DNA from: Salpingoeca rosetta
Taxonomy: Eukaryota; Protista; Choanoflagellata
Direction: 5' to 3'
Assembly: GCA_033442325.1 (NCBI GenBank)
Contig: JAWQFM010000029.1
Location: 917,496-941,329 of the forward strand
Length of the DNA stretch: 23,834 nt
Under the pieces are notes generated by a model. It was given only the letters and a program-made list of their open reading frames with translations, was not told the DNA's origin and searched no databases. Position numbers and translations under genes: made by a program. Shown in pieces: positions 17,957 to 19,261 of this stretch; the first letter of the stretch is position 1, and each line of letters starts with the position of its first letter.

Positions 17957-19261
17957 ATGGTGACGAGGACGAAGATGACAGGATGGGTGCAACGGCGTGC
18001 GACGGCTCAGGTGCTAGTGGCAGCTGTCTGCTCGTTGCTTTTCCTGGCTATGCCGTTTATCAGCGTCGGAGAGGTGATACTGGAGGAGGATGATGCGGGC
18101 GCCTTCCACATCAACACGAGCGATCCCATGAGCCAGCCCGTGTTTCTGAACGGCCTGAATGTGCACGAGACCCTCAGCATGTTGATGAGCACCATGTCGG
18201 CGCAGCAGAGCGTCAACGCTGCACAGGAAAGCATAATCGATGCACAACGGAGTGCGATTTCGGCCCAGCAGAGGGCGATTGATCGTGTCCGTGGCGAAGT
18301 GTGCTTTCCAAGTGCCACGACGTTTGGGCAGCTCGGCTCAACGACAAACAAGTGGCTTGGTGGCGTGTTGGCGAACAACGGCCTGATCTACGCGGCGCCG
18401 TACACCTCCCCGTCCGTGCTCATCATCGATCCGGACACCAACACCGTCGACACGACCACAATCTCTGGACTCGGACAAGACGCAAACAAGTGGGCCGGTG
18501 CTGTGCTGGCAAGCAACGGCCTCGTTTACATGTTTCCATCAACCAGGGACACGACGCTCATCATCGACTCAGACACCAACACCATTGACACCACAAGCAT
18601 CCAAGAACTTGGCTCTGGTCATCTCAAATGGCGCAGTGGCGTTGCGGCCGGCAACGGCCTCATCTTCGGCATCCCTTATTCTGCCACGGCTGTGCTGATC
18701 ATCGATCCAGCGACCAACTCGGCCGACAACACCACGCTTTCCGGGCTGTCGAGCGAGGGATTAAAGTGGTATGGTGGCGTGCAAACGGACAGCGGTCTCA
18801 TCTACTGCGTTCCCGTCGAAGCGCCCTCTGTGCTCATCATTAACCCAGAGACCCTGACAATGGATCTCACCACCATCAGTGGCCTGGACACAAACATCAA
18901 GTGGTGGGGCGGCGTGCTGGCACGCAATGGCCTCATCTACACGATTCCAAGTGTCTCTGCAACGGCACTCGTCATCAACCCAGCCACCAACGCCACGCAT
19001 GAGGTCTTCATTGCAGCCACGGCAGTGTCTTCAAGATGGGTCAATGGCGTGCTTGCCCCCAACGGCAATATCATCGGCATCCCATCCAACTCACGATCAG
19101 TCCTCAACTTCGATCCTTCAACCAACGCCTCCGATACCACAAGCATCAACAATCTGGAAGGGTTTGCCAAGTGGTGGGATGGTGTACTCGCTCCAAACGG
19201 CCTCATCTACAGTATTCCAGCTTTCGCCGACTCGGTTCTCGTCATTGACCCAGGATGCTGA
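17957..19261 (+). CDS. Intronless secreted or anchored protein (about 434 aa): signal segment, short beta-rich domain, coiled coil and seven 45-46 aa repeats (predicted 7-bladed beta-propeller)
   Basis: ATG at 17957 (alternative 17975), hydrophobic VLVAAVCSLLFLAMPFISVG, heptads AQQSVNAAQESIIDAQRSAISAQQRAI, then seven copies of KWxGGVLAxNGLIYxIPxxxxSVLIIDP from about 18347 to TGA 19259-19261. Confidence 0.92.
   Translation: MVTRTKMTGWVQRRATAQVLVAAVCSLLFLAMPFISVGEVILEEDDAGAFHINTSDPMSQPVFLNGLNVHETLSMLMSTMSAQQSVNAAQESIIDAQRSAISAQQRAIDRVRGEVCFPSATTFGQLGSTTNKWLGGVLANNGLIYAAPYTSPSVLIIDPDTNTVDTTTISGLGQDANKWAGAVLASNGLVYMFPSTRDTTLIIDSDTNTIDTTSIQELGSGHLKWRSGVAAGNGLIFGIPYSATAVLIIDPATNSADNTTLSGLSSEGLKWYGGVQTDSGLIYCVPVEAPSVLIINPETLTMDLTTISGLDTNIKWWGGVLARNGLIYTIPSVSATALVINPATNATHEVFIAATAVSSRWVNGVLAPNGNIIGIPSNSRSVLNFDPSTNASDTTSINNLEGFAKWWDGVLAPNGLIYSIPAFADSVLVIDPGC

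What the first reader, a model, noticed from the sequence alone, without database searches (positions are those of the whole stretch)
17957..19261. Intronless secreted stalk-and-head protein with seven KWxGGVLAxNG repeats: candidate recognition protein, possibly horizontally acquired
Seen: a single 1.3-kb exon among intron-dense neighbours, encoding a signal segment, a beta-rich stretch (EVILEEDDAGAFHINTS..PVFLNGLNV), a Q/I heptad coiled coil and seven highly regular repeats that are not canonical WD40, Kelch or NHL. The residue after KW varies (L, A, R, Y, W, V, W), as might be expected at repeated ligand sites. Inference: an oligomeric, collectin- or fibre-like protein with a propeller head, perhaps a lectin for bacterial prey. 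I recall similar repeats in uncharacterised microbial, viral and algal proteins, but this is unverified.
Basis: partly seen in the sequence, partly recalled or inferred. Interest (0 to 1): 0.75.

Follow-up and report, generated by a model that had tools for sequence, protein, structure and literature searches.

The report
Secreted stalk-and-propeller protein, huge choanoflagellate family
This is an intact, intron-free gene of the choanoflagellate Salpingoeca rosetta for a probably secreted protein with a coiled-coil stalk and a seven-bladed propeller head; it is one of at least 100 copies whose head varies on one face, like a repertoire of binding proteins, and it is not a recent foreign import.

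Summary
Window 17957-19261 (+) is one uninterrupted 434-codon gene. It encodes a signal-like segment, a small beta module, a Q/I coiled coil and seven 45-46-residue KW repeats. AlphaFold2 folds the repeats with high confidence (pLDDT 90) into a seven-bladed propeller.

The gene is not a lone import. The genome is Salpingoeca rosetta. It holds at least 95 full-length, stop-free, intronless paralogues (42-74% identity), and the N-terminal module alone matches 130 places. About 45 of these lie on one 2.5-Mb contig (counted by hand).

Overall dN/dS is about 0.3. The loops on one face of every blade are hypervariable, while the scaffold is strongly constrained.

The same head sits on:
- phage tail-fibre and baseplate proteins;
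- a giant-virus collagen-stalk protein (41% identity);
- a TIR-plus-membrane-helix protein of S. rosetta.

The stalk module occurs only in choanoflagellates among the named hits, where it also carries Kelch, SBBP, FG-GAP, receptor-L and mucin heads.

My best reading is a secreted, probably trimeric binding protein from a diversified recognition repertoire. The ligand is unknown. Recent horizontal transfer is not supported; an old exchange of the head with viruses or bacteria stays open.

The scan found this family before on other DNA of this genome (s1-435996, s1-435949, s1-435998, s1-434361, s1-438636). I found no paper describing it.

The parts
17957..19261 (+). Complete single-exon coding sequence (434 codons plus stop)
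   Evidence: ORF list; full-length stop-free match to itself and to at least 95 paralogues in the same genome; the same 434-aa product is called on GL833021.1.
17957..18070 (+). Residues 1-38: basic N-terminus, hydrophobic segment and a small-residue S-V-G site. Probably a cleaved signal peptide; a signal anchor is not excluded.
   Evidence: Hydropathy peak of 2.5 over residues 17-33. Nearly every paralogue has Met, basic residues, a hydrophobic run, then the conserved G-E-V start. DNA similarity between paralogues begins only after this segment. Cleavage is inferred; no signal-peptide predictor was available.
18071..18160 (+). Residues 39-68: conserved beta-hairpin module (E-D-x-x-G-A-x-H-I-N-T-S ... 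V-x-V-N-G-x-x-V) with a conserved N-T-S sequon
   Evidence: Strands 40-44 and 50-54 in the full model. Folded alone, pLDDT is 89.9. A profile of it finds only 83 proteins among 1.84 billion. The single structural hit is cubilin 53-92 in 6gje (Z 2.2, weak).
18161..18301 (+). Residues 69-115: Gln/Ile heptad coiled-coil stalk
   Evidence: One helix at 69-115, with ten-residue pLDDT blocks of 88-95 falling to 76 at residues 101-110. Heptads are seen. Stalk length varies between paralogues by heptad-sized indels and is greatly expanded in L033. The oligomer state was not modelled.
18302..18304 (+). Cys116, the conserved partner candidate of the C-terminal Cys434 (codon 19256-19258)
   Evidence: Cys at both columns in 25 and 27 of 28 close paralogues. 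Cys116 is in all 20 choanoflagellate-type rows of A1 and Cys434 in 19 of them, the other being a gap. Both flank the strand that closes blade 7.
18311..19258 (+). Residues 119-434: seven-bladed beta-propeller head. Blades start at K132, K178, K224, K270, K315, K360 and K405 (nt 18350, 18488, 18626, 18764, 18899, 19034, 19169).
   Evidence: AlphaFold2 gives four strands per blade, with pLDDT 96-99 over nearly all of the domain and dips to 86-92 near residues 351-360, 391-400 and 431-434. Best PDB folds are Vgb lyase 2z2p (TM 0.85, 10% identity) and the YVTN propeller 1l0q. 39 of 63 family members hit Pfam DUF6923 and 24 hit DUF5074.
17273..17460 (.). Upstream (TG)n microsatellite; not part of the gene
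   Evidence: Tandem Repeats Finder.
19273..19438 (.). Downstream (TG)n-rich microsatellite, starting 12 nt after the stop
   Evidence: Tandem Repeats Finder.
16388..16487 (.). 100-N spacer marking the join to the preceding unplaced scaffold; the real known context of the gene starts at 16488
   Evidence: N runs of exactly 100 at 9917, 13749 and 16388. Window 16488-23834 equals record GL833021.1 base for base.

Best explanation
The gene encodes an extracellular protein built as a stalk and a head.

- After a probable signal peptide comes a small conserved beta-hairpin module.
- A Gln/Ile coiled coil follows, and together these form a self-associating stalk. It is probably trimeric (inferred).
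- The C-terminal 316 residues form a seven-bladed propeller, probably locked by a Cys116-Cys434 disulfide at the stalk-side face (inferred).
- The opposite face carries the D-A and B-C loops and is free to bind a ligand.

The gene is one of at least 100 intronless paralogues in Salpingoeca rosetta. They arose by duplication inside the choanoflagellate lineage. They keep the scaffold under purifying selection while the binding-face loops have diverged almost to saturation.

The most likely function is multivalent binding of extracellular targets by a diversified repertoire. Candidate targets are surface glycans or other surface molecules of bacteria, viruses or other cells. The conserved N-terminal module would serve oligomerisation or docking to a common partner.

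Shown here: gene integrity, architecture, fold, family size, selection pattern and the distribution of head and stalk. Inferred: secretion, trimer, disulfide, and binding as the function. Unknown: the ligand.
For: Intact gene under constraint:
- Pairwise dN/dS with close paralogues is 0.24-0.35, with dS 0.6-1.4.

Architecture conserved in paralogues:
- At least 95 full-length single-frame matches; only 4 of the 114 match rows hold a stop.
- 130 matches to the N-terminal module.
- Only the coding part is similar at DNA level; the flanks are not.

Fold:
- pLDDT 90.3, helix 69-115, seven blades.

Variable face:
- Entropy is 2.7-3.0 bits at the two residues before KW, 2.3-2.6 bits at the two residues after the conserved Pro, and 1.7 bits after KW. 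The scaffold core is mostly 0.0-0.7 bits, with intermediate values in the other loops and turns.
- For these 35 sites pN is 0.52 and omega 0.63, with single positions up to 1.2. For the other 281 propeller sites pN is 0.12 and omega 0.17.
- By propeller topology these positions lie in the D-A and B-C loops, which share one face (established knowledge of the fold).

Heads on fibres elsewhere:
- P0002 is 49% identical, lies between portal and cement genes of a phage contig, and its N-terminus looks tail-fibre-like by eye.
- P0020 is BppU_N plus this propeller.
- The Hokovirus collagen-triple-helix protein matches at 41% identity, rmsd 1.3, E 1e-32.

Sensor use in the same genome:
- PTSG_02868 has a TIR match (E 2e-5, below Pfam's cut-off), a hydrophobic helix at 222-244 and this propeller.

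Stalk as a general display device:
- The module carries Kelch, SBBP, FG-GAP, TNFR-Cys-like, receptor-L/LRR and mucin heads.

Extracellular hints:
- Conserved Cys pair and conserved N-T-S sequon.
Against: - There is no expression, localisation or binding evidence for this gene or for any family member.
- No multimer model could be run, so the trimer rests on analogy (collagen, BppU and tail-fibre stalks; a weak cubilin-N match at Z 2.2) and on Gln at core heptad positions.
- Omega at the variable sites is not clearly above 1, and synonymous sites are near saturation. Relaxed constraint on loops explains the pattern as well as diversifying selection does.
- The mapping of variable sites to one face rests on strand order, not on measured coordinates.
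- The best PDB fold match is an enzyme, Vgb lyase.
- The hydrophobic N-terminal segment could be a signal anchor rather than a cleaved signal.
Confidence: 0.6

Rival explanations
1. The head is an enzyme (a Vgb-type lyase, or an SMP-30/gluconolactonase-like lactonase). The family would be a set of secreted hydrolases or lyases for digesting prey material.
For: The best PDB fold matches are virginiamycin B lyase structures (2z2p TM 0.85, 2qc5). Some sources name relatives 'streptogramin lyase' or 'SMP-30/Gluconolactonase/LRE-like region'.
Against: Identity to Vgb is 9-11%. A profile search of PDB sequences finds no natural enzyme, only a designed Kelch-like protein at E 2e-5. The face where propeller enzymes place their active site is the hypervariable one here, and the residues conserved in all blades (K, W, G, N, G, Y, P, D, P, T, N, D) look like scaffold. 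Homologous heads sit at the ends of viral fibres.
Confidence: 0.1
2. The family is a structural or self-adhesion component (theca, extracellular matrix, colony or mating contacts) and not a recogniser of foreign targets. The many copies would serve dosage or cell-type variety.
For: It has the same secreted, oligomeric, multivalent design. The stalk also carries mucin-like and receptor-L heads. S. rosetta has several matrix-dependent life stages (general knowledge).
Against: A dosage or purely structural role does not predict near-saturated divergence confined to one face of the head beside a strongly constrained scaffold. It also does not predict the TIR-linked membrane version.
Confidence: 0.2
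3. One reading: this intronless gene was acquired horizontally, from a bacterium, phage or giant virus.
For: The family is intronless in a genome where the median gene has five introns and only 8.8% have none (PMC7971027). Close head relatives occur in phages, bacteria and a giant virus. PTSG_02868 is flagged 'FOREIGN' in that paper's alien-index table. No animal or fungal protein appears among the 120 best hits.
Against: For this gene: it is nested in an S. rosetta-only clade, is 57-74% identical to at least 29 paralogues, and has ordinary composition. For the family: it occurs in Microstomoeca, Hartaetosiga, S. kvevrii and Barroeca. One choanoflagellate clade is not rejected and scores better than the free tree (p-AU 0.98). 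The backbone of the tree is unresolved and unrooted, so no donor or direction can be named. The stalk module is choanoflagellate-only among the named hits.
Confidence: 0.05
4. The ORF is a dead or selfish repeat (a pseudogene copy or the cargo of a mobile element) and not a working gene.
For: Copy number is high. Several copies are frameshifted or truncated (L031, L034-L037). The close subfamily did not appear in the public protein sets searched. The gene lies on a small unplaced scaffold.
Against: The 434-codon frame is open. dN/dS is about 0.3 against 27 paralogues. Flanks are unrelated between copies, so no element ends are shared. Signal, module, Cys pair and blades are all conserved.
Confidence: 0.03

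Closest known systems
Pfam DUF6923 (PF21959) and DUF5074 (PF16819) propeller repeats, uncharacterised
   Same: 39 and 24 of 63 aligned family members match these models, with best E 3e-18 and 3e-14. The repeat length and the seven-blade head are the same as in the bacterial and phage proteins that carry them.
   Different: The window protein itself gives no Pfam hit at E<=1. Both families have no known function, and the only two papers found mention DUF5074 merely in passing. The choanoflagellate stalk is not part of them.
Phage receptor-binding fibres and baseplate proteins, and the Hokovirus HKV1 collagen-triple-helix protein A0A1V0SG21
   Same: The C-terminal propeller head is homologous (49% identity to phage P0002; 41% identity and rmsd 1.3 to the Hokovirus protein) and is placed at the end of an oligomeric fibrous stalk.
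   Different: The stalk here is a short coiled coil with a choanoflagellate-specific N-terminal module and a signal peptide. It is not a collagen repeat, a BppU_N domain or a tail-fibre N-terminus. This is a cellular gene in a family of at least 100.
Collectins and ficolins of animals
   Same: Works-like resemblance only: a secreted protein with an N-terminal segment, an oligomerising stalk and a C-terminal globular head, present as a multigene set. In S. rosetta the same stalk also carries a head that UniRef names a fibrinogen C-terminal domain (PTSG_09713).
   Different: There is no collagen-like Gly-X-Y region, no C-type lectin head and no fibrinogen head in this protein. Pfam did not confirm the fibrinogen label of PTSG_09713. 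It is not a member.
Virginiamycin B lyase (Vgb) and the archaeal YVTN surface-layer propeller (1l0q)
   Same: Seven-bladed propeller of similar blade size: TM 0.85 normalised to Vgb, and 19% identity to 1l0q. There is a weak YVTN repeat match.
   Different: There is no significant sequence relationship to Vgb. The YVTN score is below its cut-off. No conserved catalytic set is evident.
Cubilin N-terminal trimerisation and amnionless-binding segment (PDB 6gje)
   Same: A beta-hairpin segment followed directly by a coiled coil at the N-terminus of a secreted protein. It is the only chain of 48,161 with Z>=2 against the isolated module (Z 2.2, rmsd 2.9, 39 residues).
   Different: Z is far below the level that shows a shared fold. 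There is no sequence match to cubilin. Amnionless is seen in the genome only as a 20-bit sub-threshold hit.

Membership tests
Pfam DUF6923 (PF21959) repeat | Score above the Pfam gathering threshold for PF21959 | tested here: inconclusive
   The query has no hit at E<=1. 39 of 63 aligned relatives, including S. rosetta paralogues, hit it with best E 3e-18. P0002 (49% identical head) scores 50.9 bits against a cut-off of 27.
Kelch / WD40 / NHL / YVTN canonical propeller repeats | Significant match to the repeat models | tested here: not met
   The query has no Pfam hit. TIGR02276 YVTN scores 20.8 bits, below its cut-off of 27.85. Kelch_6 or Kelch_1 hit only 11 and 9 of 63 relatives, weakly. The PDB profile search finds only a designed Kelch-like protein at E 2e-5.
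Seven-bladed beta-propeller fold | Seven four-stranded blades around an axis, with ring closure by an N-terminal strand | tested here: met
   The AlphaFold2 model has pLDDT 96-99 over nearly all of the blades, with dips to 86-92 in three short stretches. It shows 7 x 4 strands, and strand 119-123 completes blade 7. At least 500 PDB propeller matches have E<=0.001.
Vgb-type streptogramin lyase | Sequence homology and the conserved catalytic His/Glu and metal site on the propeller face | tested here: inconclusive
   There is a fold match only (TM 0.85, 10% identity) and no sequence match in PDB. Catalytic residues were not mapped. The corresponding face is hypervariable among paralogues, which argues against a shared active site.
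Collectin / ficolin | Collagen-like Gly-X-Y stalk plus a C-type lectin or fibrinogen-like head | tested here: not met
   The stalk is an alpha-helical coiled coil. The head is a propeller. There is no collagen, Lectin_C or fibrinogen Pfam hit.
Propeller lectins (tachylectin-2 type) | Match to the Tachylectin model; sugar-binding sites repeated between blades | tested here: inconclusive
   PF14517 hits 2 of 63 relatives (best E 4.7e-6) and P0020 weakly, but not the query. Sugar binding cannot be tested with these tools.
Cubilin N-terminal segment | Trimeric beta-helix plus coiled coil that binds amnionless | tested here: inconclusive
   There is a single weak structural hit to 6gje_B (Z 2.2) and no sequence hit. 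Foldseek finds nothing at E<=0.001. Amnionless PF14828 gives only 20.3 bits against a cut-off of 30.4. Trimer and complex models could not be run.
S. rosetta stalk-and-propeller paralogue family (undescribed) | Signal segment, conserved H-I-N-T-S beta module, Gln-rich coiled coil, Cys before the head, seven KW blades, C-terminal D-P-G-C, single exon | tested here: met
   All of these features are present in the query and in 27 aligned paralogues. The query is nested in the family clade.

The most novel reading that the evidence does not exclude
The family is a pre-animal pattern-recognition repertoire. More than 100 trimeric, secreted propeller 'readers' with individually diversified binding faces would dock through a shared cubilin-N-like module onto a common membrane partner (amnionless-like). 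Beside them is a hard-wired membrane version in which the same head is coupled to a cytosolic TIR domain. This would make the closest relatives of animals users of a germline-diversified, non-LRR, non-immunoglobulin recognition system, whose head was exchanged with giant viruses or phages.
Probability: 0.15. Interest if true: 0.85.

Novelty: new variant of a known kind. Interest (0 to 1): 0.6.

Why it matters
[quoted passage not shown] They live by catching bacteria and are infected by giant viruses. A family of at least 100 secreted stalk-and-head proteins, with one hypervariable face, a TIR-coupled membrane sibling and heads shared with viral fibres, would be a candidate for how these cells tell targets apart before animal immunity existed.

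The family also seems largely missing from the public protein sets I searched. It may therefore have been overlooked in comparative studies of animal origins.

For this particular locus the news is modest: it is one ordinary, intact member on a small unplaced scaffold.

Tried and rejected
I have no named bacterial genomes beyond the names given.
- A word search restricted to residues 36-118 gave nothing (20 candidates). The profile search replaced it.
- The preprint on a choanoflagellate prey receptor (TRPW1, WD40 propeller) is unrelated to this family.
- Full-text searches found no paper on the family: PTSG identifiers; DUF6923/PF21959, with only passing mentions of DUF5074; S. rosetta with beta-propeller and intronless; cubilin with amnionless and choanoflagellate.
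- Only PTSG_02868 appears in the stored part of the HGT paper's supplement.
- Foldseek with the isolated N-terminal module found no PDB match. A PDB sequence search with its profile found nothing meaningful.
- Exact look-ups of the window protein and nine close paralogues found none in the 15-billion-protein collection. Yet one search lists the 434-aa product as called on GL833021.1. I could not settle whether NCBI annotates this gene.
- A transposable-element reading was rejected because flanks are unrelated between copies.
- I could not read model coordinates, so the Cys116-Cys434 distance and the face of the variable sites were not measured.
- No joined spliced model was needed or used.
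Full report
**1. Observation**

The frame 17771-19261 (+) is open. Translation from the Met at 17957 gives 434 residues, with seven repeats of 45-46 residues. Each repeat starts K-W-x-G-G-V-L-A-x-N-G and ends V-L-x-I-D-P-x-T-N-T. The K residues are at 132, 178, 224, 270, 315, 360 and 405.

The upstream part of the frame (17771-17956) contains a (GT)n run and is not conserved in paralogues.

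Pfam finds nothing at E<=1. NCBIfam gives only a sub-threshold YVTN repeat.

**2. What the window really is**

The last 7,347 bases of the window (16488-23834) are identical to the unplaced scaffold GL833021.1 of the Salpingoeca rosetta assembly GCA_000188695.1. N runs of exactly 100 at 9917, 13749 and 16388 separate other scaffolds. Only 7.3 kb of true context is known.

Within that context, the three other called genes span 862, 1,265 and 1,914 nt for products of 119, 233 and 227 aa, so they carry introns. This gene uses 1,305 nt for 434 aa.

In S. rosetta the median gene has five introns and only 8.8% have none (PMC7971027).

**3. Structure**

AlphaFold2 on a 63-sequence alignment gives mean pLDDT 90.3. 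The model shows:
- a low-confidence hydrophobic N-terminus;
- two short hairpins at residues 40-67;
- one helix at 69-115;
- a seven-bladed propeller at 119-434, in which strand 119-123 completes the last blade.

The best PDB folds are generic seven-bladed propellers: Vgb lyase (TM 0.85, 10% identity), the YVTN propeller 1l0q and Bacteroides sensor domains. A profile search of PDB sequences finds only a designed Kelch-like protein.

Cys116 and Cys434 flank the closing strand. They are conserved in nearly all choanoflagellate-type members examined: Cys116 in all 20 such rows of A1 and Cys434 in 19, the other being a gap. I infer a ring-locking disulfide, but I could not measure it.

A conserved N-T-S sequon lies in the N-terminal module.

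**4. A very large family**

Searching the genome with the protein gives 114 matches. These represent at least 95 separate full-length loci at 42-74% identity, and only 4 of the 114 match rows hold a stop. The N-terminal module alone matches 130 places.

By my hand count from these tables:
- about 45 loci lie on contig C4 (2.52 Mb), many as neighbours;
- about 18 lie on C25;
- about 8 lie on C35.

The 27 paralogues that I aligned all have a Met, a signal-like segment, the conserved beta module, a Gln-rich coil of variable length, the Cys, seven blades and a C-terminal D-P-G-C.

DNA similarity covers only the coding part, from the mature N-terminus to shortly past the stop. The flanks are unrelated, so this is not a mobile element.

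**5. Selection**

Pairwise dN/dS is about 0.26 (median over the 368 paralogue pairs with dS below 1.5). For this gene it is 0.24-0.35, with dS 0.6-1.4. The copies are old and constrained.

Variation folded over the seven blades is sharply localised:

| Position in blade | Mean entropy (bits) |
|---|---|
| Two residues before KW | 2.7 and 3.0 |
| Two residues after the conserved Pro | 2.3 and 2.6 |
| Residue after KW | 1.7 |
| Scaffold core (other loops and turns lie in between) | mostly 0.0-0.7 |

The 35 variable sites have pN 0.52 and omega 0.63, with single positions up to 1.2. The other 281 propeller sites have pN 0.12 and omega 0.17.

The strand order is KW strand, I-Y strand, V-L-I-I-D strand, then D-T-T strand. 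The variable sites therefore lie in the D-A and B-C loops, which share one face of a propeller. The stalk and the Cys pair lie at the C-D side, the other face.

Synonymous sites are near saturation. Diversifying selection is therefore not shown; only a lack of constraint is.

It is not the main variable site.

**6. Relatives of the head**

The word search found 341 proteins. Pfam on the aligned family gives DUF6923 in 39 and DUF5074 in 24 of 63; both are uncharacterised. Notable relatives:
- S. rosetta paralogues.
- Members in Microstomoeca roanoka, Hartaetosiga gracilis and Salpingoeca kvevrii.
- Bacterial proteins with lipoprotein-like N-termini (my reading of the sequences); named examples in the list are from Spirochaetaceae and Leptospiraceae.
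- P0002, which is 49% identical. Its N-terminus looks tail-fibre-like by eye, and it lies between portal and cement genes on a 41-kb phage contig.
- P0020, which joins a BppU_N baseplate domain to this propeller.
- Two Cylindrospermopsis phages, whose relatives are 34-36% identical.
- Among viral models, a Hokovirus collagen-triple-helix protein is by far the best match (41% identity, rmsd 1.3 over 315 columns, E 1e-32).

In S. rosetta itself, PTSG_02868 combines a TIR match (E 2e-5, below Pfam's cut-off), a hydrophobic helix at 222-244 and this head. It maps to C4:1718090-1720098 in two pieces.

**7. The stalk module**

A 47-column profile of the module finds only 83 proteins among 1.84 billion. 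In most hits the module lies near the N-terminus, behind a hydrophobic segment. The hits that carry names are all choanoflagellates: S. rosetta, M. roanoka and Barroeca monosierra.

Besides the propeller, the module carries other heads:
- Kelch, SBBP and FG-GAP heads;
- a TNFR-Cys-like head (PTSG_10030);
- a receptor-L/LRR head (L048);
- mucin-like heads (L039);
- a head that UniRef names a fibrinogen C-terminal domain (PTSG_09713), which Pfam did not confirm.

Folded alone, the module has pLDDT 89.9. Foldseek finds nothing. An exhaustive structural comparison returns a single chain with Z>=2: cubilin 53-92 in the amnionless-cubilin complex 6gje (Z 2.2, rmsd 2.9, 39 residues). Amnionless appears only as a 20-bit hit at C4:287518-287889.

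**8. Horizontal transfer**

A tree of 111 heads puts the query inside an S. rosetta-only clade of 29 (SH-aLRT 99). The backbone is unresolved. Forcing all 54 choanoflagellate-type heads into one clade gives a better likelihood than the free quick search, and it is not rejected (p-AU 0.98). Composition is ordinary.

This gene therefore arose by duplication within the lineage. The family predates the split of several craspedid choanoflagellates.

An old exchange of the head with viruses or bacteria fits several observations:
- the patchy distribution;
- the lack of introns;
- the 'FOREIGN' flag of PTSG_02868, whose best outside hit is Emiliania huxleyi.

Neither a donor nor a direction can be named.

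**9. Verdict**

The lectin and prey part is untested. The transfer part is not supported for this gene.

The best-supported mechanism is a secreted, probably trimeric stalk that presents propeller heads whose free face has diversified across at least 100 paralogues, that is, a binding repertoire.

I found no paper on the family. The scan had already noted it on other DNA of this genome.

Noticed in passing
window 9917-10016, 13749-13848, 16388-16487: N runs of exactly 100 bases show that the window, and so the end of 'contig' C29, is a chain of unplaced scaffolds. Features to the left of 16488, including the patchwork at 503-9916, are not shown to be linked to this gene.
   Followed up: partly
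window 18071-18160 versus 18311-19258: Among close paralogues, synonymous divergence of the N-terminal module (dS 0.38) and the signal segment (0.46) is about half that of the propeller scaffold (0.79). This could mean gene conversion at the 5' end or constraint at the nucleotide level.
   Followed up: no
L054 (G000:C4:1717237-1721598): PTSG_02868 has a TIR-like domain, one hydrophobic helix at 222-244, a Gly/Pro linker and the same propeller. It would be a type II membrane protein with the head outside. The model joins two pieces across a stop-containing stretch, so the splice needs transcript support.
   Followed up: partly
L048:902-2956:- (G000:C14); L039 (G000:C31:588500-593300): The same signal, beta module and coiled coil are joined to a receptor-L/LRR-like head (L048) and to Ser/Thr-rich mucin-like repeats (L039). 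Elsewhere they carry Kelch, SBBP, FG-GAP and TNFR-Cys-like heads. The stalk is a shared display module.
   Followed up: partly
L034, L035, L036, L037 (G000: C1:3075700, C15:1040100, C17:259900, C4:937000): Four nearly identical copies on four contigs break frame at the same point after the first blade. This looks like one disrupted copy that was later duplicated, with assembly gaps nearby.
   Followed up: no
L033 (G000:C4:1707000-1712000), minus strand: One paralogue has a stalk expanded to about 200 residues by tandem 21-residue units. Stalk length is therefore evolvable in heptad multiples.
   Followed up: no
L055 (G000:C4:286018-289389): This is the only match to Pfam Amnionless in the genome (20.3 bits, below the cut-off of 30.4). 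It lies about 12 kb from a family member at C4:299777-301069.
   Followed up: no
G000, close subfamily (L002-L030): Paralogues 57-74% identical to the query did not appear in the word search of 5.8 billion proteins (the best outside hit was 71% over the head only). Ten exact look-ups also failed. The subfamily may be unannotated, perhaps masked as a repeat.
   Followed up: partly
window 19783-21047 (-): The neighbouring called gene (233 aa over 1,265 nt) has a weak DDHD Pfam hit. A 226-N gap lies inside it at 20270-20495.
   Followed up: no
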